A stretch of 63,942 nucleotides of DNA, counting the filler, from Octopus bimaculoides (lineage: Eukaryota): NCBI RefSeq assembly GCF_001194135.2. It is 8 parts of 8 records of this genome, joined end to end, with 100 filler letters (N's around TTAATTAATTAA, not from the genome) between each part and the next. Parts side by side here need not be neighbours in the genome. Positions count along the whole stretch, not along the records: positions 1 to 28,822 come from NC_069005.1; 7 more parts are not named here. One strand, given 5' to 3'. The position numbers and the translations under genes are program-made. The notes beneath the pieces were generated by a model, which saw only the letters and a list, made by a program, of their open reading frames with translations, had not been told where the DNA came from and made no database searches. Of the stretch, positions 2,477 to 27,864 are shown piece by piece (the first letter of the stretch is position 1; the number at the start of each line of letters is the position of its first letter).

Positions 2477-2578
2477 CTAAGATGATAATAGGGAGAAGTG
2501 TTCAGTTAGTTGTTCCACACGTCGTTTACATTTCATTTTCAGCTGAAGAGAGTCCAACTTGTTGATAGGAAGTTCAAT
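2477..2578 (-). CDS. PLEKHM2: PLEKHM2-like terminal coding exon: IELPINKLDSLQLKMKCKRRVEQLTEHFSLLSS-stop
   Basis: Strong pyrimidine tract ending tctcag, in frame, TAG at 2477-2479. IELP resembles VDLP. The seven exons total 1014 nt = 338 codons. Confidence 0.78.
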   Translation of the reverse strand: MELPINKLDSLQLKMKCKRRVEQLTEHFSLLSS

Positions 2579-2699
2579 CTGAGAGAAAGAGAAAGAGAAT
2601 GAGTGAAAGAACATGATGAGGTAATATATATAAAGAGATGGAAAGGGAGAAGAGTACAGATTGTGAATACTTACATATATACATACATTTATGTGTGTA

Positions 2700-2743
<44 letters not shown>

Positions 2744-3058
2744 TGTATGTGTGTGTGTGTGTGCCATCATCATCTATTAATGCCCACTTTTCCATGCTTG
2801 CCTAGATCAGACAGAATTTATTGAAGCAGATTTTCTATGCCTGGATGCACTTTCTGTCACCAACTTGTTTCCAAGCAAGGTAATATTTTCCCAAGGTGAT
2901 GTCTAGACAAAGGTAAAAAACAATACACACACACACACATCAAAGGGATGTGAGTTCAATTCTCATGGCTGGTTGCTGACAGATTTTTCTGCTCTGTAAG
3001 GTTTTATTCTATATATGGTGTTCTATCAGTATTTATGTGTTGAAAAATATATCTGTCT

Positions 3059-3112
<54 letters not shown>

Positions 3113-3261
3113 TTGCAAGATTCTTGATGTGAAATCGTGTGTTGAAACAGATATTGTTGTATTTGGGGATGGTCATGTTGTCAGTTTAGCCAATAAAAAC
3201 ACACACACTATATATTTGCTGTTAATTTGATTCAGCTTTATATTACATTAATTGTATTTCA

Positions 3262-3304
3262 GCCAGAGTTCTTTCATCACACTTCTGTGACCTCATCAGT
3301 GGTC
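3262..3304 (-). ncRNA. Degenerate PLE-type type I hammerhead motif
   Basis: Minus strand ACCA CTGATGA G GTCAC agaagt GTGAT GAAAG AA CTC^TGGC. Core present, short stems I and III. Confidence 0.55.
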
Positions 3305-3659
3305 CTTTGCTTTCTTCTTTCTTATATGTGTGTCCCTCCTTGCTAACGATAGCTATTTTGTATTTTGTATTCCTAATGTATGTGTCTATATATGCGCATT
3401 CGTATCCCTCTATGTGTGTCTATGTTTGTCTATGTTTTGTAAGTGTATGTGTGTGTACGGGGAGTGCCTGTATTATCTGTATCCCCTGTTAATACATGTT
3501 CGTTTAAGTTTGTTTTTATTTATTTGTTCATGTGTTTATACCTATTTTTTTGTGTTGTTTTGTTTGTTTTTTGTATTTAATTTAATTTTGTTAACATATG
3601 TAGTTATTTAATTCTATTTGTTTATCTATGTATTGTATTATATTTTGTTCATATTGTTA

Positions 3660-5760
3660 TTGGTTTATGGGGATTTTATTGTCATATGTTGTGGTTTGTT
3701 GTGGGTGTGTGCTAGTGTTCCATTCCAGTTTCCTATTNNNNNNNNNNNNNNNNNNNNNNNNNNNNNNNNNNNNNNNNNNNNNNNNNNNNNNNNNNNNNNN
3801 NNNNNNNNNNNNNNNNNNNNNNNNNNNNNNNNNNNNNNNNNNNNNNNNNNNNNNNNNNNNNNNNNNNNNNNNNNNNNNNNNNNNNNNNNNNNNNNNNNNN
3901 NNNNNNNNNNNNNNNNNNNNNNNNNNNNNNNNNNNNNNNNNNNNNNNNNNNNNNNNNNNNNNNNNNNNNNNNNNNNNNNNNNNNNNNNNNNNNNNNNNNN
4001 NNNNNNNNNNNNNNNNNNNNNNNNNNNNNNNNNNNNNNNNNNNNNNNNNNNNNNNNNNNNNNNNNNNNNTACTGCATCGTCCCTCTGTACATCTTATACT
4101 ATAGACCACATTTCTGGCTTTACAGTTTGTGGGCTAAATCTACATACAGTACAGTTCCTATCAGTGCAGGGGTTTCTACTAAAAGGGTAGGTTCTACCGA
4201 TAAGGGATTTGATAGGGTTGCCTGGCCTTTCAACAACCTTAATTCTTAGCTTAAGTTTGTCTAGGGCCCTTCTAAAGCGGTATGCCAGTTCGCCTCTAGT
4301 GGTGGTGTCGACGAACATGATGCTCTGGTATTTGTGGCTATCATACCATGAGTTGGCCTTCCCTATTTTCTTCTTAATCCTTTCAATGGTGTTCCATGAT
4401 TTGCTCCTATAAAGTTGGCAAATCACATTCCTATCATTATGTTTGATGGTTTCAGATTTCCTCATAGCTCCTTTGTATACTCTGATCCTTTCTTTATGGC
4501 TGTAACCTGAGAACTGCATGCGGTGAACGAAATGTTGTATATGTCTCTTTAACTCTGTAGGGTCACACATGCAGGACACATTTCGCATTACTCTGACGAG
4601 GTCTACCATCAATGTATTGAATTTGGCATTGTCCGCGATAGCTGTGTTCCGGTGGATCGGGTATTTGGAGGCCATAGGTTTGGCATAGTGTGAATGAAGG
4701 ATTTGGGTTTTATTATTCTCAGTTTCCAGCCAAGGTAGTCTATGGTTAGGGTGTTTAGTAGGGTAGTCTATCATGACCTTTATACTCTGGTGGATGGAGT
4801 TAGCTATTTGCTTGACATATCGAGAGTACATATTCACGAGTATGGAGTTCTGTGTCAGGCGTTCCTTGAGCCTTCTGTCCCATCATACCATGAAGAGGTT
4901 GGCCACATCACCGGCGATACTAACACCCACAGCTGCCTCCTCGTCCTGGGCGTATATTCTGTTGTTAAACTTAAACGTGTGGCCTTTTAGGGTAACTCTT
5001 ATACTAGCTCCTAGTGCATGTGCGATCATTTTCTTTACCTGATGAACATTTGCGGGGGTCCGTATGGCTCTGGTCCATCCGCTCCATCTCTTTATAGGGG
5101 TCTTCCTAGCCATAGAAGTAATTGTGGGTGGTCTACCTCCTAAACGTCTACTAGTGCAGAAACTTCTAAGGTCGTGTTTATCTAGATATACATCGTCATA
5201 TGTCAATCTAAGTAGGAGGCCCAGTTCTTCTGTGTTGACATTGCGGAACTCCACTTTGCTCTTTTCCAAGGCAAAATCCACGTCGAGAGATGGGTATAGT
5301 GATACCACATTCATGCTACCCACTATACATCCTGTCAGGTCGCAGGTGTTGTTACAGTCGTTGATCCTGCTGAGGAGATCTTCCGTGCTATCACAAACAT
5401 CAGGTGACATCCGGATTAAGGAGCGTATGATCATTGAGAGGAAGTAGGAAATCCTGTAGTTGCTAGCGATATTCGCTCCACAGACTGGTCTTGTTGGTGG
5501 TACCGCCACAGGATCAGTAGTTACTTTGTGGTCCTTGCGAAGTCCATACAGTGTGGAGATATCGTTGTTCCAGGCTTGCAAATTGTTGACTGTGCGTTTC
5601 TGGGGTCCAAGAAGAATTGTCCACATCATCATGTGGGCGTTGAGGACCTTTTCTCTCTCCTCATGCGCCTGTAAAGTTGTTACTTTCGTATTGGCGATGT
5701 GAGGTTGCATTGCCTGGATATAGTTCGGTAAGCTGTCTATTGACATCCTGCTGTAATTCA
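3660..5760 (-). mobile_element. Penelope-like retroelement, decayed RT plus C-terminal Cys-rich linker; endonuclease mostly lost in an N gap
   Basis: ORF 4883-5839 has VGSMNVVSLYPSL...FKFNNRIYAQ...GVSIAGDVANLFM. ORF 4094-4837 has HFVHRMQFSGY...IKVVERPG...NPCTDRNCTVC. NRKLEWN follows the gap. Frameshifts present. Confidence 0.8.
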
Positions 5761-5947
5761 ATGAATGCGAAACAAAGAACTGCCAAAATTTTTGCAATAA
5801 GAGTATGAAACATGAACATGAGAGGCGATGCCCTTGCATAGACCAAAATACTTACTTTGTAACTCTCAAGAGACAGAATCACTCTAGAAAATTCTCAACA
5901 AAATGTTTGTAACCTCTCCAGTTTTTGATTAGCAATTTCTTTAATCA

Positions 5948-6460: not shown

Positions 6461-9400
6461 ATCATCATCATTTAATGTCCGTTGTCCAAGCTGGCATGGA
6501 TTGGACAGTTTGACTGGGCTGGCATGTTGGAAGGCTGCACCAGGATCCAGTCTTATTTAGCATGGTTTTCTACGGCTGGATACCCTTCCTAACACCAACC
6601 ACTCTGAGAGAGTAATGGATGGTATTACATGCCATCAGCACAGGTGCCATTTGCGTGACACTGGTATCTGCCATGATTGCAATTTTGCTCAGCTTGATGG
6701 GTCTTCTTTTCAAGCACGCCATAATGCCAAAGGTCTTGGTCATTGCCTCTGTGGGGTCCAACACTCGAAAGGAGTTCAACCACTTTGCTTCCATGAGGCC
6801 CAATGCTCAAAAGGAACTCAGCCACCTTGTCTCCATGAGGCCCAATGCGCAAAAAGGAACTTATGCACATTGCCTCCATGATACCCACCACTCGAAAGGA
6901 ACTCAGTCACTTTGCCTCCATCAGGCCCAATGCTTGAAAGGTACTCAGCCACTTTACCTCCGTGAGGCCCGACGTTCAATGGTTGACTTTTTTACATGCC
7001 ACCAGCATGGTTGCATTTGGCTTGATGGCTTCTCTTAAGCAGAGCATATCACCAAAGGTCTGTCACTAGTCATTGCCTCTGTGAGGATCAAAGTGTTTGA
7101 AGGTCATGCTTCACTGCCTCATCCCATGTCTTCCAGGGTCTACATCTACTACAGGTTCTCTCCACAGTTAGAGATCGGCACTTCTTTACACAACTGTCTT
7201 CATTCACACGCATCACATGACCATACTAGCACAGTCGTCTCTCTTGCACACCACATCTGATTCCTCTTATAGCTAGCTTTTCTCTCAAGATGCTTACACT
7301 CTATCGAACATGCACACAGACAATGCACATCCAGCAAAGCATATTGGCTTCATTTCTTTCAAGCCTAATCCTATTCTCACAGCTAAGCTATTGGAACAAT
7401 CATTTCCACTACTAACCTAGTCACCAAGATACTGGAAGCTATCTACTACCTCTAGCTTTTCCCCCCTGGCAGTTGATGGAGTCTATTTTCTGCACATGTT
7501 CAGCATCTGTTATGCCTGTGCACCTTCCACATACAAAAGTTTCACTGTTAACTTATCTTTGATGTTGCTGCACCTTTTGTGTGTCCAAAGCTTACACTGG
7601 GTGCATCTTATGGAGTTTCTACCTACACCTTTTCTACAGATTGAGCAGGGCTATCTACCTGAGAGGATTTGCGATTTGTTTTAGCTAGGTGAACTCTAAA
7701 GCCCTTTGATTCTAGACCTTGCCGCCATACCCGGAACTTCTCTAGTTCTGGTAGTGATTCTGCTATAAGAGCAAGATCGCCAGAACAGAGGAGCTCCCAG
7801 GAGCAACCTGTCTTGAATTCCTTTGTTATTGTCTGGAAGACAATGATGATCAAGAGGGTGCTGAGCACTGATCCTTGGTGAACCCATACATGTACCCTGA
7901 ATTCTTCATTGTACTCATTGCCAACCCTCACCTTACTGGTAGCATCCCTGTACATGTCTTGTATAGCTCTCACCAACCACTCATCTATCCCTAGTTTCCG
8001 CATTGACCACCAGATAAGGGATTGGGGGTCCCTGTCAAAGGCTTTCTCCAAGTCAACAAAGGCCAAGTACAGAGGTTTATCTTTGGCTAGGTATTTCTCC
8101 TGCAGCTGTCTTACCAGAAATATAGCACAAAACCAAACTGCATTTCATCTAGACTAACTATCTCTGTAACTTTCATCACCTGATCCAACAATTTGATACT
8201 TCTGTAATTATTTCTATCTAAGGCATCACGTTTACCTTTGTAGCAGTTGACTGTGATGCTGCTACACCAGTCATTGAGCATGACTCCTTCATTGACCACC
8301 TGATTTACAATAAAGGTGATGAGACCATAACCCACACCACCAGATATTTTAAGCATTTAAGCGGTGATACTTGATGGGCTAGGGGCTTTCCCTGCCTTCA
8401 TATCCTTAATTGCTTTATCTACCAAGTTACTGTCGATTCAAATAGCTAGTCCCTCAGTTCGATCAACATTTGGCAGACTCTCTTCTTTCCATTCATTTTT
8501 CACATTCAGCAGTCTTTCATAATGGCATCTCCAAGCCTCTTTCTTTGCAGACCCATTAAAAGCAAGTGCACCATCATCCATGTGGACACATTTCTCTCCT
8601 ATGATGTCACAATTTTCTCTCGCACACTGTCTTGCAATCCAAAATACCTCAGTTCGTTGGTGCTAACGGTGTTGTACATAGGCAAACTTCTTTTCTGCTT
8701 CTCCCCTGTATAGATATACTTGTCTCCTAGCTTCCCTTCTGGCTATCTGATACAGTTCCTTGCTGCCCCCACTTTTCCAGGCCTGTTTCTTTGCCTTAAT
8801 GGCCCTGTCTACAGTATTGTTCCACCACCACTTCACCCTGGGTCTGGAAGGGACTTTGCGCTGCCATAAATTTGGTCTGTGGCACTCAGCAAGCTGTTCT
8901 GCAGGATTTCCACATTGCCTTCTATATCACAGGTTTGTAGCTGCTCTTCTCTCCCATCAAATTTCTCCTAAATCAAATGTCCCTAAATCTCTGACCATAT
9001 GAATGGTCGTTAAGTTTCCTTCTTTTTCAGATTGGTCTGCATCTCGGCAGCCTTTTGGCCTGGAGTCAAAAGTCGCTAATGACTAGTCTTTGCTAAGGGA
9101 TACATTCTTCACCAGAGAGAGTCTTTGCATTGAAGAGCAACCATGCATCCCTTGGTATGGTGAGAATGAAATGTATCTGGCTACCAGAGTCACCTGATTG
9201 ATAGGTTATCAGGTGGCTGGCTGGCTTCCTGAAGTTGGTATTGCAGATCAAAGGTTATTCGCATCACAGAACTCCAGTAGCCTTGTTCCCTTTTTGTTTC
9301 AGAAAGGAATTCCATGGCCCCTATGAACACCATGGAAAATACTGGGCTGCCATCTGACATGCCCATTGAAATCCCCAGCCATGAAGATGAGATCCTTGTC

Positions 9401-9830
9401 ATCCGTCTTAGAGGTAGTCTGCAGGAGGATATCATAAAAGTGGTCCTTCTGTTCATTTGGTAGGCCCGCTTCTGGGGCATAGGCAGATATAATTGTAGCT
9501 ATGCTATTCTGCAAGACTAGCCTGAGCTTAAGTACTCTATTGCACACTCTGACTACCTCTATGAACTTATCCACCCATTTCTCAGCAAGAAGTATGCCCA
9601 CACCACCTACTCCACCACAGTTACCTTCGCAGAAGATTTTATATCAATGTGTCTTGCCTTTGAGGAACCTGTCTGAAGTTCCTCTCCACCTAACTTCTTG
9701 GATGCAACATACATGAACATGCCTCCTTTCAAGCATCTCTACAATCTCATTAGATCTACATTGTGCCTACATTTACAGTGCCAACTCTGAAAACTGGGAA
9801 AGGAATGTGGTAGGAAACATGGGAAGGAGA
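6461..9830 (-). mobile_element. RTE-clade LINE, near full length, decayed (APE endonuclease + RT + 3' UTR with gat tail)
   Basis: APE motifs IISAYAP and AGDFNGHV (9299-9601). RT motifs AFVDLEKAFDR and VHQGSVLS (7623-8066). 3' end ...ggacattaaatgatgatgatg near 6461. Confidence 0.9.
6767..6980. repeat. About 42-nt minisatellite, 5 degenerate units, in the RTE 3' UTR
   Basis: Repeated gaaaggaactcagccactttgcctccatgaggcccaatgctc-like units. Confidence 0.85.
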
Positions 9831-12491: not shown

Positions 12492-13140
12492 TTATGCGTG
12501 CATATTAAGACATGTTCTGTATTTTTCAATGAAATGAGTTTCTTTATTTAAACGTTCTTGTGGAAAGATTGTGTCTTTGCAATGGTAGAAGGGGTAGACT
12601 GTGAAATTTGGTTTGATATTATCTGCACATTTTTCTATATGTTCACTGAGTGGAATTTGCCTGTATTGCAGGAAAGAGATTTGCTCTTTATGTAGAGTGG
12701 TTCTCCGTCTCAAGGTCATACTCATCTGTCCAATATAGTTGTGTCCACAACCCAAGCAGGTTATTACATAAATTAGGTTCTCAGAGGCACAAGTGAAACT
12801 AGTTTTAATTGTGAACTTCTGTCCTTGTTTGAAAAGGAAATCTGAACCTTCAAGTAATTTGGGGCAGGTTCCACAGTTTGGGCGTCCACATTTTTTAACC
12901 ATTGGTTTCGTGGTTGTTTTGTAAAGCTTCACATTTGTTAGCAGTCTCTTTAGCGATTTGTGTTGCTTTTTGCATTTGATGAGTCTGTGCGTTTTCAGGA
13001 TGTCATTCATCTTTGGATCTCTAGTTAGTAATGGGAGATTTTGCTCAATAGTATTGAATGTCTCACTGTTTCTGGGGTTGTGTGTTGATATAAACAGTAG
13101 TGTTTTTAAGATGAGGTGTGGTGTTATGTTTTGTTGTCCT
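12492..13140 (-). mobile_element. Penelope-like element 3' fragment with intact GIY-YIG reading frame
   Basis: KCGRPNCGTC...FTCASENLIYVITCLGCGHNYIGQ...LRRRTTLHKEQI...KETHFIEKY...LN. Confidence 0.88.
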
Positions 13141-17622: not shown

Positions 17623-17799
17623 CAGAATACAATAGGAAGAGATCTGGTTGTCTTGGAGAATAGCTGTGACATCTTCCAAATTGGCACTGCCCAGTGTACG
17701 GAAGAAATTAGTCTGTAGATCCTCATGACACATAAGTAACTTGTTTTGACTTAGTAAAACACAGCAACCAATACAGCTGTTTGATATCACTCCACGATT
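17623..17799 (-). CDS. PLEKHM2: PLEKHM2-like coding exon: NRGVISNSCIGCCVLLSQNKLLMCHEDLQTNFFRTLGSANLEDVTAILQDNQISSYCIL
   Basis: Acceptor tttcactttcag, donor gtaaat, 177 nt, phase 0/0. CHEDLQTNFFRTLGSA resembles recalled CHEDCQTSFFRSLGTA. Confidence 0.92.
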
Positions 17800-17829
17800 C
17801 TGAAAGTGAAAGTGAAACAAATAATGAAA

Positions 17830-18810
17830 TAAACAGAAGTAGATGGGTCAGTAGGAGGCTTACAGAGTTATTTTGCAAACCCACATCACTCCACATTTAC
17901 TTCCACTGCCACTCCGACCATCCGCATCATATAATTCAATCAAATCCAAAATCCCAAATTTTAAGGATAAAATGGATTTGTACTGATATAGGGGACTACT
18001 GGAAACATGCTTTTGTACACCATTATGTCAAACATGGTTACAGTAAATCACAATTAAAGGAAATTGCAAATGACATAGCTAAGATTAGCAAGGAAAGTCA
18101 AATTTTCCCACACAATTTTAGCAAAGTACAATGATGGAATTCTTTTAGTGATTAACTGGCACCAACATTTTGCTGTCATTTCAAAAGTGTTACATAAAAG
18201 TTAGCAGCATGTTGTGGAAAAATATCCCTGTTTCTAACATATATTTCTTCCGTTGCCTATTGTAGCCTTTAGACAGAATAAAAACATAAGAGAACTATTA
18301 ACCTCTATTTTTGACTCCAAGAAAACTAACATTGTAGTTTCTGCACACAGTACCTTGAAAAACAGCCACAAGAGAGGTAAGCCCTGTTCATTATGCAACA
18401 ACATGAGTCAAGTCAATTCCATCAGGAATCATAACAGAAATGCTGAGATTTACATGGAAGAAGAGATGTGTAGAAATTCCCATTTGGTGTACGCATCAGA
18501 ATGCACCAAACATAACTTGATTTATGTTGGTTGTACAACAGAACAATTATACAAAAGATTCAATGGGCACAGATATGATGTCAGGCACAATAACAGTAGT
18601 TTGACAGAATTTGCCGAACATTTTGCATCAAACGGCTGCAATTTTGAAAAAGACTTGAAAGTGCATATTCTCAGAAAATATTCTGAATCTGCTTCACTTT
18701 CAGTCCTCAAAATGCATGAGGAGAAATATGTTTGAGAGTTATTAACATAACACTCTGGAAGGATGAATAAAATGACAGGAGAATTTCATCATATTTACAC
18801 AAAACTGATT
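17830..18810 (+). mobile_element. Penelope-like element fragment (RT thumb + GIY-YIG)
   Basis: KPTSLHIYFHCHSDHPHHIIQSNPKSQILRIKWIC; PIVAFRQNKNIRELL; HLVYASECTKHNLIYVGCTTEQLYKRFNGHR. Confidence 0.88.
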
Positions 18811-22122: not shown

Positions 22123-22429
22123 CTGAAAAATAACAACACATCTGAAATATATTCCTTATGAAATCTTTGGACATCTACTATTTATGAAAGATCACCAGAA
22201 ATTATCTTTCTGCTTTCTGTGTAATTATACCTGACTATCTTTTATTTGTACTTATATTTTCATTAGCTCAAGTGCTGTTTCTTATAGCCAGCTGCTGCTT
22301 ATTTGGATTACAACTCTCATGATGTGACACTGGATTTTAGGCATTTGATGTGGTTTGAGCTCTAATCTGTGCTTATCTATTTATCTACACCTTTTGACGT
22401 ATTCTTACTCTTCATGTGTGTGTATATGT

Positions 22430-22690
22430 AACAGATTGGTTTTACATCAAACAAGGTGTCCACCACAGCTGCATCCTTTCTCCAAATCTCTTTAATATAT
22501 ATCCTGAGGTAATAATGAGAGATGTGTTGTACGGTTTCACTGAAAGCATCAAAATTAATGGTAAGGTCATCACAAATCTGAGTTATGCAGATGATGTAGT
22601 CCTCATAGCCAGCAGCATGCAAAAACTACACGATTTAGTTAATAGAGTAAACAATGCAAGAACTCAAGTTGGGTCTCATCTGAACCCCAC
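22430..22690 (+). mobile_element. LINE RT fragment (RTE-like)
   Basis: KQGVHHSCILSPNLFNIY...ITNLSYADDVVLIA. Confidence 0.8.
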
Positions 22691-22791
22691 CACCCCAAAA
22701 AATAATGTGTGTGTGTGTGCACGCATGCACACATGATATATACTATGAGATATACAATGAGAAAGTTTTAAAAAAGACAGAGTCAACTTAC

Positions 22792-25157: not shown

Positions 25158-25603
25158 CTGGTTGGAAGGAGAGATAAGAGAGAAGAGAAAATTACTTTAT
25201 TCACAGAAATTATTTTATTGAAATTACAGCAAAACAACTAGGGCTGTTTTTAGTAGTGTGCCTGTGGAATTTATATACATGTGTGTGTGCTAGTGTTTCT
25301 ATGTATGCATATACGGAGACTGCATTAGTTTTTCTGAGGACACTTCTTTCAAGAGCTTTAACCTTTTTCTAACTTACTTTTCTACCTTATTTTTCAGATA
25401 AATAATGTCAGACTGACTCAGAAAATGAAAAGGTATGCTGTAATCATTGCCTTAAAAGCTTAGCATATTGATATAGAGATAGCACACTTCCTGGAAGTTG
25501 CCAAGTCCTTCATTGTCAAAGTTCAAAAGGGCCTGGAAGCTGCTGACAGGGATCCAACATCAGCAGCTAAACACAAAAAACAAAACTGATATACCCTGTG
25601 TGT

Positions 25604-25650
<47 letters not shown>

Positions 25651-25893
25651 TGAGTGTGTGTGTGTGTGCATGTGTGTTAAAGTAATAAAGTTAATGTCTG
25701 GTCATAGAGTGATCAATGGTTTCAAATCCATGAAAGCTGTTGCTTCACAGATGACTCATTAGACTCTAGTCCAAAGACAAATTTAACTCTTCACCTCTTA
25801 TTTCTCTCTTTTCAAGATCAGTGATGGTTTGTCACTGGAAAAAGTTATAGTATTTTGCGAGTGGGGTGAGTTTTCATCACTAGCTGGTGATTA

Positions 25894-25940
25894 ACACATG
25901 CTGAGGACAGGTAGCCACCCAGAAACTTGAGTCTGTGTGT
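25894..25940 (+). ncRNA. Type I hammerhead ribozyme motif, copy A
   Basis: ACACATG CTGAGGA CAGGT AGCC ACCCA GAAAC TTGA GTC^TGTGTGT. Catalytic core intact. Stem I has two G-U pairs; stem II has two mismatches next to the core. Confidence 0.85.
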
Positions 25941-26399
25941 ATCACGTAAGGCTAGGGGTGGGAGCAATGACCTCCCCTCGCAAATACTAATCGGACACAG
26001 AATGTGTGTCATTAGCCAGCTGGAAGAGATGTCTTCCTGGGGCTATAGACGCCAATAGCACTGTCCCGTATAGGACGCCACACTTGGTTGGCAATTATAT
26101 GTTACGATTCCATATTGCTACTGTTTACATCTCACCCAGAGATTTAATATAGCTTATTTCTCCTTTTTCAAGATCAGCGACGGTTCTTTCTCAGACATAT
26201 GAAACATTGACAGTGTATATATATCTATATATATATATATATATATATATCATAACATATAATTGCCAACCAAATGTGGCATCCTATACGGGACAGTGCT
26301 ACTAGCGTTTATAGCCCCAGCTGGCTAATAACACACATTCTGTGTCCAATTAGTATTTGCAAGGGGAGGTCATCACTCCCTTCCCTAGCCTAATGTGAT

Positions 26400-26446
26400 A
26401 CACATGGACTCGAGTTTCTGGGTGGTTACCCATCCTCAGTGTGTGT
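26400..26446 (-). ncRNA. Type I hammerhead ribozyme motif, copy B
   Basis: Minus strand ACACACA CTGAGGA TGGGT AACC ACCCA GAAAC TCGA GTC^CATGTGT. Intact core, perfect 5-bp stem II, palindromic ACTCGAGT stem III; two mismatches at the core end of stem I. Confidence 0.9.
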
Positions 26447-26756
26447 TAATCACCAGCTAGTGGTGAAAACACACCTCACTCACAAAATACTGCATGCTTT
26501 TTCCAACGATGAACCATCGCTGATCTCGAAAAAGGAGAAATAAGCTATATTAAATCTCTGAGCAAGATGTAAACAGTAGCAATATGGAATCATAACATAT
26601 AATTGCCAGCCAAGTGTGGCATCCTATATGGGACAGTGCTGCTGGTGTTTATAGCCCCAGGAAGACATCTCTTCCAGCTGGCTAACAACACACATTCTGT
26701 GTCCTATTAGTATTTGCGAGGGGAGGTCATCGCTCCCATCCCTAGCCTTATGTGAT

Positions 26757-26803
26757 ACACATGGACTTGAGTTTTTGCATCAGTACTCATCCTCAGCATG
26801 TGT
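26757..26803 (-). ncRNA. Degenerate type I hammerhead motif, copy C
   Basis: Minus strand ACACATG CTGAGGA TGAGT ACTG ATGCA AAAAC TCAA GTC^CATGTGT. Perfect stem I, but G12 is changed to A and stem II is damaged. Confidence 0.75.
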
Positions 26804-27864
26804 TAATCACCAGCTAGTGATGAAAACTCACCCCACTCGCAAAATACTATATGCTTTTTCCAGCAACGAACCATCGCTGATCTCGTAAAGAGAGAAATAA
26901 GCTATATTAAATTCAATAAATATTAAAACGGGCAAGTTAGACAAAAATGATATTAGCAACTTCAATGAAGAGTGTAATAGACATGTGTGGGTGATGTGTA
27001 TGTGAGCGTGTATTGAAGGAACTGTACTATCAATTCCTCTCATTTAATAAAAAATATGCTCTATACATGTACTGAGTTTTTGTTCTTCTAGAGATAGTCA
27101 TACATAGTATTATATAAGACTGTTAGTGGAACAAAGTCTAGCTCCAGCATGATAGAGAATCACCAGACTGAGGTCAACCTTTAATGATATCCTCAACATA
27201 ATGCACCATATGTCCCTGTCCTGAGAGGAAGGCCTAAAGGGACTTGGAAAAGTATAAAGAAGTCATGGGAACATACATGGTTTTGAAGAAAACATCAGAA
27301 ACATCAGGGGGCTAGTCAATTACATCGACCTCAGTGTGATTTCATCGACTCTGAAGGGATGAAAGGCATAGTCAATTTCAGCAGAATTTGAACTCAGAAC
27401 ATAAAGACAGAAAAAATGCCAATAAGGATTTTATCTGGTAAGCTAACCATTCTGCTAGCTCGCTGCCTTAATAATAATAATCCTTTCTACTATAGGCACA
27501 AGGCCTAACATTTTGGGGGAGGGGACATCGATCCCAGTGTTTCACTGGTAATTAATTTATCAACTCCGAAAGGATGAAAGGCAAAGTCAACCTTGGTAGA
27601 ATTTGAGCTCAGAACTAAGCAAATTGCCCAAAATGCCAATGATTGTGCCAGCTTTCCACCTTAATAATATGTGCCTGGTGTACCCATATCAGACAGGTAG
27701 TCATGATGGGTATACTGAGTTTTATATATTTTACCCCAGTGTCCCTTTGATGGCATGCAGTGCTCTCTCACTCAATAATAATAATAATAATAATAATAAT
27801 GGTTTCAAATTTTGGCACAAGGTCAGCAATTTTTAGTAATATTGTTAAACACATCAAACCTTAC

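What the first reader, a model, noticed from the sequence alone, without database searches (positions are those of the whole stretch)
25798..26912. Retrozyme-like element: 357-nt non-coding tandem monomers, each with a type I hammerhead ribozyme
Seen: a 357-nt unit repeats in tandem with no ORF, and all three ribozyme-bearing copies have a hammerhead at the same position. The three copies combine to ACACA(C/T)G-CTGAGGA-TGGGT-ARCC-ACCCA-GAAAC-TCGA-GTC^C(G/A)TGTGT. That gives a 7-bp stem I, the CUGANGA/GAAA core, a 5-bp stem II, a minimal stem III with the palindrome ACTCGAGT, and a GUC cleavage triplet. Established: metazoan non-LTR retrozymes are tandem repeats of a few hundred nt with minimal type I hammerheads. 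Their transcripts self-cleave to monomers that can circularise, and Penelope-like elements are thought to mobilise them. Palindromic stem III supports dimeric folding. Inference: this is a cephalopod retrozyme family that should produce an RNA of about 357 nt, possibly circular. I cannot check whether the family is already catalogued. Each genomic copy is damaged at a different place, mostly by transitions consistent with CpG decay, so activity is predicted for the consensus and younger copies elsewhere, not necessarily for these.
Basis: partly seen in the sequence, partly recalled or inferred. Interest (0 to 1): 0.92.

Follow-up and report, generated by a model that had tools for sequence, protein, structure and literature searches.

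The report
Decayed hammerhead-ribozyme repeat cluster (retrozyme-type)
This is a worn-out cluster of three copies of a roughly 357-base non-coding repeat, each carrying a self-cutting hammerhead RNA motif; it belongs to a family of about a thousand copies shared by several related species, and it is a new example of a known class of animal mobile element, not a new kind of thing.

Summary
The repeat and its hammerheads are real, but the layout was misdescribed. There are 1.1 units on the + strand (25797-26189) and 1.86 units on the - strand (26249-26912, period 357). The two arrays converge on a (TA)n tract.

All three units carry a type I hammerhead at the same unit position. None looks intact:
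- Copy A has G12>A.
- Copy P has a broken helix II and a broken loop 3 palindrome.
- Copy B keeps the core but has lost two helix I pairs.

Public DNA contigs show about 1,000 family copies per genome in at least four species. Sub-families carry different but always palindromic loop 3 sequences (UCGA, CUAG, CCGG, CAUG), which supports cleavage as a dimer.

Helix II is closed by an unusual C/A opposition. Rfam gives only a sub-threshold Hammerhead_1 hit (15.8 bits against a cut-off of 34).

RNA-seq shows sparse reads in both orientations and no ends at the cleavage sites. The predicted 357-nt or circular RNA is therefore unsupported, though these libraries cannot exclude it.

Penelope-like element remnants lie in the same window.

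Verdict: a new member of the metazoan non-LTR retrozyme / Penelope-type hammerhead repeat class. Interest is moderate to low.

The parts
25797..26189 (+). Unit copy P: 1.1 units in hammerhead-sense orientation on the + strand. Its outer (5') end is at the unit position ATTTAATATAGC/CTTATTTC. Weak similarity may extend back to about 25781.
   Evidence: (I1, D6). It is 89.3% identical to unit A and 87.1% to unit B.
25894..25940 (+). Hammerhead of copy P: ACACAUG CUGAGGA CAGGU AGCC ACCCA GAAAC UUGA GUC^UGUGUGU. The core is intact. Helix II has two mismatches, the loop 3 palindrome is broken (UCGA>UUGA), and helix I has 7 pairs including two G.U. The predicted cut is between 25933 and 25934.
   Evidence: Rfam gives no hammerhead hit even on an 81-nt stretch.
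26216..26250 (.). (TA)n microsatellite where the two convergent arrays meet. About 25 nt of unrelated sequence (26190-26215) precedes it.
26249..26555 (-). Unit copy B: 307 nt, truncated at its 3' end (in sense) against the (TA)n tract. It lacks a 17-nt segment that P and A have.
   Evidence: (D2, D3).
26400..26446 (-). Hammerhead of copy B, the best preserved: ACACACA CUGAGGA UGGGU AACC ACCCA GAAAC UCGA GUC^CAUGUGU. The core is intact, helix II has 5 bp (U10.1-A11.1) and the loop 3 palindrome is intact. The two helix I pairs next to the core are lost through CpG decay on both strands. The predicted cut is between 26407 and 26406.
   Evidence: On an 81-nt stretch the only hit among 4227 Rfam families is RF00163 Hammerhead_1, at 15.8 bits (cut-off 34), E 0.14, covering model positions 1-45.
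26556..26912 (-). Unit copy A: a full 357-nt unit. Its outer (5') end is at the same unit position as copy P.
   Evidence: A 498-nt single-copy contig from an independent run of the same species spans the 26912 junction with no differences (26838-27335).
26757..26803 (-). Hammerhead of copy A, dead: ACACAUG CUGAGGA UGAGU ACUG AUGCA AAAAC UCAA GUC^CAUGUGU. It has G12>A, helix II is destroyed, and the loop 3 palindrome is broken. The predicted cut position is between 26764 and 26763.
   Evidence: It does not match the motif search.
26407..26763 (-). The cleavage-to-cleavage monomer (357 nt) that a - strand transcript would yield if both hammerheads cut. It is 44% GC, with a circular minimum free energy of -115.8 kcal/mol against -91.5 +/- 5.2 for shuffles (z = -4.7), and 68% of bases paired.
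   Evidence: No RNA ends are seen at its termini.
25396..26929 (.). A 1,534-bp segment holding about 400 bp of other sequence (with a (TG)n tract), the whole repeat cluster, and 17 nt more. It is absent from the orthologous site in three related species. In one other species the left junction and the sequence up to 25618 are present.
   Evidence: Contigs of organisms C (867 nt) and D (629 nt) join 25395 to 26930 with about 23 nt between. A contig of organism B (372 nt) does likewise, but its left part is inferred from matching contig depth (40.8). A contig of organism H (514 nt) runs on through 25395 to 25618.

Best explanation
The locus is an old, decayed insertion cluster of a non-autonomous, non-coding repeat of the metazoan 'non-LTR retrozyme' class. 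These elements are now regarded as derivatives of the terminal repeats of Penelope-like elements (PLEs).

Each ~357-nt unit carries a type I hammerhead:
- Helix I has 7 bp, continued after a 2-nt UA bulge by 5 more pairs (GUGAU/AUCAC).
- The core is CUGAGGA / GAAA.
- Helix II is a 4-bp GGGU/ACCC stem with a 4-nt loop.
- Helix III has 2 bp with a palindromic 4-nt loop.
- The cleavage triplet is GUC.

The expected life cycle is inferred from published work on coral, mussel and axolotl elements, and is not shown here. Read-through transcription of multimers would come first. Two neighbouring hammerheads would then pair through the palindrome ACUCGAGU into an extended helix III and cut after GUC. 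[quoted passage not shown] A PLE reverse transcriptase would copy them back into DNA, giving tandem and inverted partial copies, often at microsatellites.

At this locus the three units are probably all inactive: A has G12>A; P has broken helix II and loop 3; B has lost the two helix I pairs next to the cleavage site. Any activity would lie in better-preserved copies elsewhere among the roughly 1,000 per genome.
For: Shown here:
- The unit occurs three times with the hammerhead at a fixed position.
- The motif is far beyond chance: 2 hits against 0.00 expected, and 2 against 0.04.
- The only Rfam hit on the best copy is Hammerhead_1, over the full length of the model.
- The family is abundant. 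2,500-3,500 DNA contigs per run align at >=80% in organisms A, B and C. Summed depth is about 57,000 at the hammerhead core against a single-copy depth of 47.6, which gives about 1,000 copies.
- In the stretch where minor variants could be scored (26421-26435), variants above about 8% fall at tolerant positions: N7, position 10.1 and loop 2. Two helix II positions also vary at low frequency (26421, 26431; 4-13%). No variant of 20% or more is listed in the core.
- The family majority restores the CpG pairs of helix I (26405 T>C).
- Sub-family hammerheads seen in the loose-end consensuses carry four different self-complementary loop 3 sequences (UCGA, CUAG, CCGG, CAUG). The broken forms seen locally or in RNA reads (UUGA, UCAA, CUGG) are single CpG-decay steps from these.
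- Cofolding gives an 8-bp intermolecular helix III: -38.1 kcal/mol for the dimer against -31.6 for two monomers.
- The monomer RNA is unusually stable (z = -4.7), 44% GC and has no ORF.
- PLE remnants in the window have a C-terminal GIY-YIG domain and CX4CxxC linkers.
- Inverted junctions recur in other family copies.

From the literature:
- Definition and life cycle of retrozymes: PMC7229834, PMC7761336.
- Their origin from PLE terminal repeats: bioRxiv 10.64898/2026.07.22.740005.
- PLE insertions as partial tandems plus inverted copies, with microsatellite bias: PMC8557442.
- An extra nucleotide after A9 and a palindromic loop 3 as PLE hammerhead hallmarks: PMC4209133.
Against: - There is no evidence of processed RNA. 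Only about 12-22 reads per million match the family, which is less than its share of the genome. They fall in both orientations and do not end at the cleavage sites. RNA contigs cross the site uncut. The library selection method is unknown, and poly(A) selection would hide small circles.
- Rfam scores are below threshold (15.8 against 34). There is no hit at the gathering threshold, none on the 1.3-kb scan, and none for copy P.
- Helix II is closed by a C/A opposition in the family majority. Read the other way, this is an extra C after A9 plus an extra A before G12. That is not in the descriptors I could read, which stress G10.1-C11.1 directly next to G12. Catalytic competence is therefore untested.
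- The two arrays are convergent and share a fixed 5' end. Published PLE schemes show an inverted 5'-truncated copy placed head-to-head instead.
- The presence/absence boundary between species (25396/26929) does not coincide with the repeat boundaries, so this locus gives no clean insertion footprint or target-site duplication.
Confidence: 0.75

Rival explanations
1. The units are terminal-repeat (pLTR) debris of an autonomous Penelope-like element. On this view they are left-over partial tandems and an inverted copy from PLE insertions, not an independently propagating retrozyme that makes circular RNA.
For: - The hammerhead has the PLE hallmark of an extra nucleotide after A9 and a palindromic loop 3 (PMC4209133).
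- Tandem plus inverted layouts at (TA)n tracts are typical of PLE insertions (PMC8557442).
- Three PLE remnants lie in the same 29-kb window.
- There is no RNA evidence for unit-length circles.
Against: - Units follow each other directly at a 357-bp period with no ORF between them.
- Depth is similar across most of the unit (roughly 700-1,300 copies), as expected of a self-contained short family.
- The PLE remnants in the window show no similarity to the unit and no hammerhead.
- The distinction is partly semantic, since retrozymes are now proposed to be pLTR derivatives (bioRxiv 10.64898/2026.07.22.740005).
Confidence: 0.15
2. The repeat is an ordinary dispersed repeat or satellite whose hammerhead-like string is a relic or coincidence with no catalytic role. 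The local arrangement arose by DNA-level duplication and inversion.
For: - Rfam scores are sub-threshold, or there are no hits at all.
- There is an atypical C/A opposition beside the core.
- All three local copies are damaged.
- No RNA ends are seen at the cleavage site.
- The cluster sits inside a larger 1.5-kb indel, so it may have moved or been lost as DNA.
Against: - The full core is kept across about 1,000 copies and at least four species, with variation concentrated at tolerant positions.
- Four different palindromic loop 3 variants are seen. A random 4-mer is self-complementary 1 time in 16.
- The helix I CpG pairs are restored in the family majority.
- The monomer is strongly self-paired.
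Confidence: 0.07
3. The element is a SINE-like repeat transcribed by RNA polymerase III that carries a hammerhead, as in the Schistosoma Sm-alpha elements, and is mobilised by a LINE rather than by a PLE.
For: - LINE-type reverse-transcriptase fragments are present in the window (RVT_1 at 7623-8066 and 22416-22736).
- Both arrays share a fixed 5' end, as a promoter-defined transcript would.
Against: - There is no tRNA-like head.
- There is no poly(A) or simple-repeat tail at the unit's 3' end. The 3' ends are variable and the 5' ends fixed, which is the opposite of LINE-mediated 5' truncation.
- Units are arranged in tandem.
Confidence: 0.03

Closest known systems
Metazoan non-LTR retrozymes (Cervera & de la Pena 2020, PMC7229834), especially the Mytilus galloprovincialis family of 350-390 bp repeats with about 5,000 hammerheads
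   Same: - The host is a mollusc.
- The unit size (357 bp) falls within the mussel range.
- It has no ORF, LTR, PBS or PPT, and GC is below 50%.
- It carries a type I hammerhead with a weak helix III.
- The unit RNA is predicted to be highly self-paired.
- There are about 10^3 copies per genome.
   Different: - No circular or unit-length RNA has been shown.
- Local arrays are very short (1.1 and 1.86 units) and convergent-inverted.
- Helix II is closed by a C/A opposition.
- Helix III is minimal, so cleavage as a dimer is expected, as in amphibian elements. Most invertebrate elements instead cleave as monomers.
- No sequence comparison with the mussel family was possible here.
Minimal / PLE-type type I hammerheads in Penelope-like element pLTRs (Cervera & de la Pena 2014, PMC4209133; Lunse et al. 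2017, cited in PMC7761336 but not readable here)
   Same: - There is an extra nucleotide after A9.
- Positions 15.2-16.2 and loop 3 are palindromic.
- A dimeric mode is expected.
- Sub-families within one genome are heterogeneous.
- Copies are found on opposite strands a few hundred bp apart.
   Different: - Helix II here is short (4 bp, against 6-8 bp in PLE min-HHRs) and helix I is long (7 bp).
- That is closer to the 'canonical' metazoan architecture of 6 bp and 4 bp.
- There is an additional unpaired A between C11.1 and G12.
- The unit is not flanking a PLE ORF.
Rfam RF00163 Hammerhead_1, and the 235 Hammerhead_1 loci annotated in the giant squid genome (PMC6962438)
   Same: - It has the same type I topology and core.
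- RF00163 is the only Rfam family that matches copy B.
   Different: - The score is 15.8 bits against a gathering score of 34.
- It is not detectable in a normal window-scale scan.
- Annotation of this kind would therefore miss this family.
Hammerhead-bearing satellites: newt satellite 2 and the Dolichopoda pDo500 satellite (PMC2837043)
   Same: - Repeats of a few hundred bp, each with a type I hammerhead.
- A weak helix III and dimer-dependent cleavage.
   Different: - Those form long homogeneous satellite arrays.
- Here the copies are dispersed, short and mixed in orientation.

Membership tests
Type I hammerhead ribozyme (RF00163) | Conserved core C3 U4 G5 A6 N7 G8 A9 ... G12 A13 A14, with an NUH cleavage triplet | tested here: met
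   Copies P and B have CUGAGGA ... GAAA ... GUC. Copy A has G12>A. In the family majority no variant of 20% or more is listed in the core. Minor variants could be scored only in 26421-26435, where N7 is the sole core position that varies.
Type I hammerhead ribozyme (RF00163) | Three helices in type I order: open helix I, hairpin helix II, hairpin helix III | tested here: met
   The order is read directly from the sequence. In the family majority helix I has 7 bp, helix II is GGGU/ACCC with loop AACC, and helix III is A-U, C-G with loop UCGA.
Type I hammerhead ribozyme (RF00163) | Score at or above Rfam's gathering threshold (34 bits) | tested here: not met
   There is no hit at the gathering threshold. 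Copy B scores 15.8 bits (E 0.14) only when an 81-nt stretch is searched. Copy P gives no hit. The family consensus could not be scored with these tools.
Type I hammerhead ribozyme (RF00163) | G10.1-C11.1 pair directly flanked by A9 and G12 | tested here: inconclusive
   The family majority reads A9-C-GGGU...ACCC-A-G12. This is either a C/A opposition at 10.1/11.1, or a G10.1-C11.1 pair with one extra nucleotide on each side. In 27-41% of depth the C is a U, giving U-A, and this change is a CpG-decay step.
Type I hammerhead ribozyme (RF00163) | Self-cleavage after H17 | not testable with these tools
   This needs in vitro transcription. RNA-seq shows no ends at the predicted sites.
Metazoan non-LTR retrozyme | Short (about 150-450 bp) units repeated in tandem, each with a type I hammerhead | tested here: met
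   Two - strand units lie at a 357-bp period, and a third unit lies on the + strand. The arrays are very short, which is within what the 2026 preprint reports: most families have at most 7 units and many copies are monomers.
Metazoan non-LTR retrozyme | Non-coding, with no LTR, PBS or PPT, and GC below 50% | tested here: met
   The longest ORF inside the units is 55 aa. GC is 44%. There is no tRNA-like sequence.
Metazoan non-LTR retrozyme | Multi-copy family dispersed in the genome | tested here: met
   2,500-3,500 contigs per run match the 657-bp stretch at >=80% in organisms A, B and C, giving about 1,000 copies from depth. Organisms D and H also show family contigs and depth over the units.
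Metazoan non-LTR retrozyme | Stable, highly self-paired unit-length RNA | tested here: met
   The circular minimum free energy is -115.8 kcal/mol, z = -4.7 against dinucleotide shuffles, with 68% of bases paired. This is a prediction only.
Metazoan non-LTR retrozyme | Abundant unit-length linear and circular RNA in tissues | tested here: inconclusive
   Three raw RNA-seq runs give 136-278 family reads of about 12 million records read, in both orientations and with no ends at the cleavage sites. Four older RNA assemblies give low-depth contigs that cross the site. The library selection method is unknown, and poly(A)+ libraries would miss such RNAs.
Metazoan non-LTR retrozyme | Co-occurrence with Penelope-like elements in the same genome | tested here: met
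   A GIY-YIG ORF at 18253-18735 scores 24.3 bits against Pfam's cut-off of 22.6. A second at 12492-13010 scores 17.3 bits. RT-like ORFs are followed by CX4CxxC linkers at 4094-4837 and 12492-13010. Homology between these PLEs and the unit was not found.
Metazoan non-LTR retrozyme | Target-site duplications flanking the array | tested here: not met
   No duplication is seen at 25797/26912 or at the species-level indel boundaries 25395/25396 and 26929/26930. The literature says such duplications are only sometimes present.
PLE minimal hammerhead (Cervera & de la Pena 2014) | [quoted passage not shown] | tested here: inconclusive
   The extra C and the palindromic loop 3 are present. The helix lengths (helix II 4 bp, helix I 7 bp) instead fit the 'canonical' metazoan type I architecture (PMC4209133).

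The most novel reading that the evidence does not exclude
The family-majority hammerhead has one unpaired nucleotide on each side of helix II (a C after A9 and an A before G12). It may be a catalytically competent, previously undescribed core-adjacent variant that standard descriptors and Rfam miss. If so, better-preserved copies of this roughly 1,000-copy family would produce 357-nt circular RNAs in cephalopod tissues. This would extend retrozyme circular RNAs to cephalopods. The locus's 348-nt inverted arms would add a source of long double-stranded RNA in animals known for heavy RNA editing.
Probability: 0.3. Interest if true: 0.5.

Novelty: new member of a known kind. Interest (0 to 1): 0.35.

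Why it matters
If confirmed genome-wide, this would add cephalopods to the animals with retrozyme-type hammerhead repeats.

It would also show that routine Rfam-based annotation misses a family of about 1,000 copies, because the best local copy scores 15.8 bits against a cut-off of 34.

The C/A opposition beside the core is conserved across sub-families and species. It offers a natural test of how much the 10.1/11.1 position tolerates.

The four palindromic loop 3 variants are a compact comparative argument for cleavage as a dimer.

The class, its mechanism and its link to Penelope-like elements are already published for other animals, including a mollusc. A specialist would not be surprised.

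Tried and rejected
- **Tandem Repeats Finder** on the whole piece did not report the 357-nt period. The array is too short and too diverged.
- **Rfam at gathering thresholds** on the whole piece gave nothing.
- **Rfam at E<=10 on 1.3 kb** gave only microsatellite noise.
- **Rfam on 81 nt around copy P** gave no hammerhead. Only the 81-nt scan of copy B gave Hammerhead_1.
- **Other copies in the window.** blastn of the unit and two hammerhead patterns found no further copy. The pattern hit at 1579-1627 has no matching helices and looks like chance.
- **First RNA lay-down.** It was swamped by the (TG)n and (TA)n tracts, so I repeated it on the repeat alone.
- **Size-selected RNA libraries.** A search found none.
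- **Literature.** Searches for a cephalopod retrozyme or hammerhead study found none. Lunse et al. 2017 (PMC5785218) is not held.
- **Empty-site comparison.** I hoped it would give exact insertion ends and a target-site duplication. It instead revealed a larger 1.5-kb indel whose ends do not match the repeat ends.
- **SINE reading.** I considered a SINE with a tRNA head and rejected it.
- **Deliberate omissions.** I did not build a full-length family consensus, because the lay-down tool gives majority letters only for the best-supported sites. I ran no further search on the PLE ORFs, because the Pfam GIY-YIG hit and the linker motifs sufficed for a side issue.
Full report
**1. What is in the sequence**

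The region 25797-26912 holds three copies of a ~357-nt unit, but not as one tandem array.

The repeat finder gives two direct repeats on one strand. One is 239 nt at 88% identity with spacing 357 (26317-26555 / 26674-26912). The other is 72 nt at 92% with spacing 340 (26249-26320 / 26589-26660); the difference in spacing is a 17-nt indel. It also gives a 348-nt inverted repeat, 90% complementary (25839-26186 against 26511-26858).

Read in the hammerhead-sense orientation, the layout is:
- Copy P, 1.1 units on the + strand (25797-26189).
- About 25 nt of unrelated sequence, then a (TA)n tract (26216-26250).
- 1.86 units on the - strand: unit A at 26912-26556 and unit B at 26555-26249.

The two arrays converge. 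Both begin, at their outer ends, at the same unit position (ATTTAATATAGC.CTTATTTC). Both end at different unit positions next to the (TA)n tract.

Tandem Repeats Finder misses the period. No further copy lies in the window. No ORF inside the units exceeds 55 aa, and there is no tRNA-like sequence.

Pairwise identities are 87-89%. Transitions dominate (32:5, 35:3, 26:8). 28 of 55 variable columns are in CpG-decay context, and CpG observed/expected is 0.37-0.53.

**2. The hammerheads**

The three motifs are:

| Copy | Coordinates | Sequence |
|---|---|---|
| P | 25894-25940 (+) | ACACAUG CUGAGGA CAGGU AGCC ACCCA GAAAC UUGA GUC^UGUGUGU |
| B | 26400-26446 (-) | ACACACA CUGAGGA UGGGU AACC ACCCA GAAAC UCGA GUC^CAUGUGU |
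| A | 26757-26803 (-) | ACACAUG CUGAGGA UGAGU ACUG AUGCA AAAAC UCAA GUC^CAUGUGU |

The order is helix I strand, CUGANGA, helix II hairpin, GAAA, helix III hairpin, GUC, helix I strand. That is the type I topology.

The pattern CTGANGA..GAAACTYGAGTC matches twice against 0.00 expected. A second pattern matches twice against 0.04 expected.

All three copies are damaged:
- A has G12>A and no helix II.
- P has two helix II mismatches, and UUGA breaks the loop 3 palindrome.
- B keeps the core, a 5-bp helix II and the palindrome. It has lost the two helix I pairs next to the cleavage site (C1.1/A2.1 and A1.2/C2.2).

Rfam gives nothing at gathering thresholds and nothing on a 1.3-kb scan at E<=10. 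When only 81 nt around copy B are searched, the single hit among 4227 families is RF00163 Hammerhead_1. It covers the full model (positions 1-45) at 15.8 bits against a cut-off of 34, with E 0.14. Copy P gives no hit.

Beyond the 7-bp helix I, a 2-nt UA bulge is followed by 5 more pairs (GUGAU/AUCAC). These are identical in all three copies and also appear in the sub-family sequences.

**3. The family**

Logan contigs of public DNA runs were laid on the unit at >=80% identity. This gave 2,500-3,500 contigs per run in organisms A, B and C. Organisms D and H also show family contigs and depth over the units.

Run X1 (organism A) contains contigs identical to the locus. One 498-nt contig spans the right-hand junction (26838-27335) at depth 47.6. 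This fixes both the source species and the single-copy depth.

Summed depth is about 57,000 at the hammerhead core and 30,000-60,000 over most of the unit. That corresponds to roughly 700-1,300 copies. A peak of about 200,000 at 26652-26695 marks a segment shared with a commoner repeat.

The family majority differs from copy B at two hammerhead positions:
- 26405 T>C (77-88% of depth).
- 26432 A>G (59-73% of depth). This makes the nucleotide after A9 a C.

In the stretch where minor variants could be scored (26421-26435), variants above about 8% occur at N7 (26435), that C (26432), loop 2 (26424/26425), and at low frequency at 26421 and 26431. The narrow scan did not evaluate the rest of the core. 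At the 20% threshold no core variant is listed.

The majority motif is therefore: ACACACG CUGAGGA C GGGU AACC ACCC A GAAAC UCGA GUC^CGUGUGU. The last two letters of the 5' strand of helix I (CG) are inferred from CpG decay in the local copies, not read from contigs.

The C and the A that flank the 4-bp helix II are conserved in every sub-family fragment seen. The C sits in a CpG, so the U-A pair of copy B is a decay product.

[quoted passage not shown] The extra A before G12 is not in any descriptor I could read. Whether this variant is active is unknown.

**4. Comparative support for a dimeric ribozyme**

Loose-end consensuses from DNA contigs and RNA reads show related sub-families that share the core but differ in loop 3:
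- GAAAC-CUAG-GUC
- GAAAC-CCGG-GUC
- GAAAU-CAUG-GUC
- GAAAC-UCGA-GUC (the form at this locus)

All four loops are self-complementary. A random 4-mer is self-complementary 1 time in 16. The broken forms (UUGA and UCAA at this locus, CUGG in RNA reads) are single CpG-decay steps from these.

RNAcofold of the majority motif forms an 8-bp intermolecular ACUCGAGU helix: -38.1 kcal/mol for the dimer against -31.6 for two monomers. This matches the published dimer model for metazoan type I hammerheads (PMC4209133, PMC7761336).

**5. The unit RNA**

The cleavage-to-cleavage monomer (26763-26407, - strand, 357 nt, 44% GC) has a circular minimum free energy of -115.8 kcal/mol. Dinucleotide shuffles give -91.5 +/- 5.2, so z = -4.7, and 68% of bases are paired. 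This is the compact self-paired shape described for retrozyme RNAs (PMC7229834).

**6. RNA evidence**

Three 2026 raw RNA-seq runs of organism A were used, with about 12 million records read from each. At >=80% identity only 136-278 reads lie on the family. They are split evenly between orientations, with depth at most about 60. No accumulation of read ends appears at 26406/26407 or 26763/26764. At >=88% identity the locus itself has depth 0-15.

This is about 12-22 reads per million. The family makes up an estimated 100 parts per million or more of the genome; that figure is my own rough estimate and assumes a genome of a few Gb.

Older RNA assemblies contain 50-146 low-depth family contigs, several of which cross the cleavage site uninterrupted.

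The predicted abundant 357-nt or circular RNA is therefore not supported. The library selection method is not on record, and poly(A) selection would deplete such RNAs. Junction-spanning reads cannot distinguish circles from genomic tandems.

**7. Context**

The window carries remnants of canonical Penelope-like elements, in which the endonuclease lies C-terminal to the reverse transcriptase:
- A GIY-YIG ORF at 18253-18735 (+) scores 24.3 bits, above Pfam's cut-off.
- A weaker one at 12492-13010 (-) scores 17.3 bits.
- CX4CxxC linkers occur at 12492-13010 and 4094-4837. This is the Zn-finger linker described for Neptune/Nematis-type PLEs (PMC8557442).

None of these remnants carries this hammerhead or resembles the unit.

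PLE insertions are described as partial tandems with an adjacent inverted copy and a bias for microsatellites such as (TA)n (PMC8557442). The mixed-orientation layout around a (TA)n tract fits that style, although here the copies are convergent with fixed 5' ends. Inverted junctions also occur in other family copies.

**8. Presence and absence between species**

Single contigs of organisms C (867 nt) and D (629 nt) align to 24736/24929-25395 and then to 26930 onward, with about 23 nt between. A 372-nt contig of organism B aligns from 26930 onward; its left part (about 25280-25395) is inferred from matching contig depth (40.8). A 514-nt contig of organism H continues through 25395 to 25618.

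So 25396-26929 (1,534 bp) is an indel between species. It holds about 400 bp of unrelated low-copy sequence with a (TG)n tract, the whole cluster, and 17 nt more.

Its ends do not coincide with the repeat ends, and no target-site duplication is visible. The polarity (insertion or deletion) is unknown.

The three units differ by 11-13% overall. About half of the variable columns are CpG-type. I have not computed divergence with those columns removed; on a rough estimate it would be near the 3-7% seen between the species' flanks. The data are therefore compatible with all three units arising together, but they do not prove it.

**9. Comparison with the literature, and verdict**

Metazoan non-LTR retrozymes are defined as tandem 150-450 bp non-coding repeats with type I hammerheads and GC below 50%. 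They are expressed as 170-400 nt linear and circular RNAs. They were studied in a coral, a mussel (350-390 bp units) and the axolotl (PMC7229834). A 2026 preprint links them to PLE terminal repeats (10.64898/2026.07.22.740005).

I found no paper on cephalopod retrozymes. The giant squid genome paper lists 235 Rfam Hammerhead_1 loci without further analysis (PMC6962438).

The organism names are coded here. My impression that the adjacent high-copy repeat at 27304-27400 resembles an octopus SINE is from memory only.

The locus meets the structural criteria of the class. It fails the Rfam threshold, and the RNA criterion is undecided. It is best filed as a new, locally decayed member of a known kind. 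The only unusual detail is the C/A opposition next to the core.

Noticed in passing
window 25396-26929: This 1,534-bp segment is an indel between species. It holds about 400 bp of low-copy sequence with a (TG)n tract, plus the whole hammerhead-repeat cluster. Contigs of organisms C and D join 25395 to 26930 with about 23 nt between. A contig of organism B does likewise, with its left part inferred from contig depth. Organism H has at least the left junction. Whether it is an insertion or a deletion is unknown, and no target-site duplication is seen.
   Followed up: partly
window 17781-18735 (+), 12492-13010 (-), 4094-5839 (-): Three remnants of Penelope-like elements. There are GIY-YIG endonuclease ORFs (Pfam 24.3 and 17.3 bits) downstream of RT-like ORFs. 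CX4CxxC Zn-finger linkers (Neptune/Nematis type) are present in two of them. The element at 4094-5839 runs into an assembly gap (a run of N at about 3733-4092). None carries the hammerhead of the finding.
   Followed up: partly
window 7623-8066 (-), 9299-9601 (-), 22416-22736 (+): These are fragments of LINE-type retrotransposons. Two match RVT_1 at 29-30 bits, and one ORF looks like an endonuclease-like fragment. The window is largely a mosaic of transposable elements and microsatellites.
   Followed up: partly
window 27304-27400: A very high-copy repeat begins here. Summed contig depth is 55,000-238,000 at >=93% identity, against a single-copy depth of about 48, in all four species tested. 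It ends in ...GAATTTGAACTCAGAAC and looks SINE-like. From memory it resembles an abundant octopus SINE, but this was not tested.
   Followed up: no
window 25839-26186 versus 26511-26858: If the locus is transcribed through, its 348-nt arms (90% complementary, 324-nt spacer) would fold into a long double-stranded RNA hairpin. That would be a potential substrate for RNA editing or small-RNA pathways. Read depth at the locus was too low to look for A-to-G changes.
   Followed up: no
window 26652-26700 (sense: GGACACAGAATGTGTG..GCCAGCTGGAAGAGATGTCTTCC): This part of the unit has 3-5 times the depth of the rest of the unit in both DNA and RNA contigs. It is therefore shared with another, commoner repeat family. 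It overlaps the 17-nt segment that unit B lacks.
   Followed up: no
other loci of the family (seen as read or contig joints at window 26711/26717 and 26863, and 26700/26863): RNA reads and DNA contigs from other family copies show tight inverted (opposite-strand) junctions within the unit, with 97-99% read agreement. Inverted duplications therefore recur in this family, and at least one such copy is transcribed.
   Followed up: no
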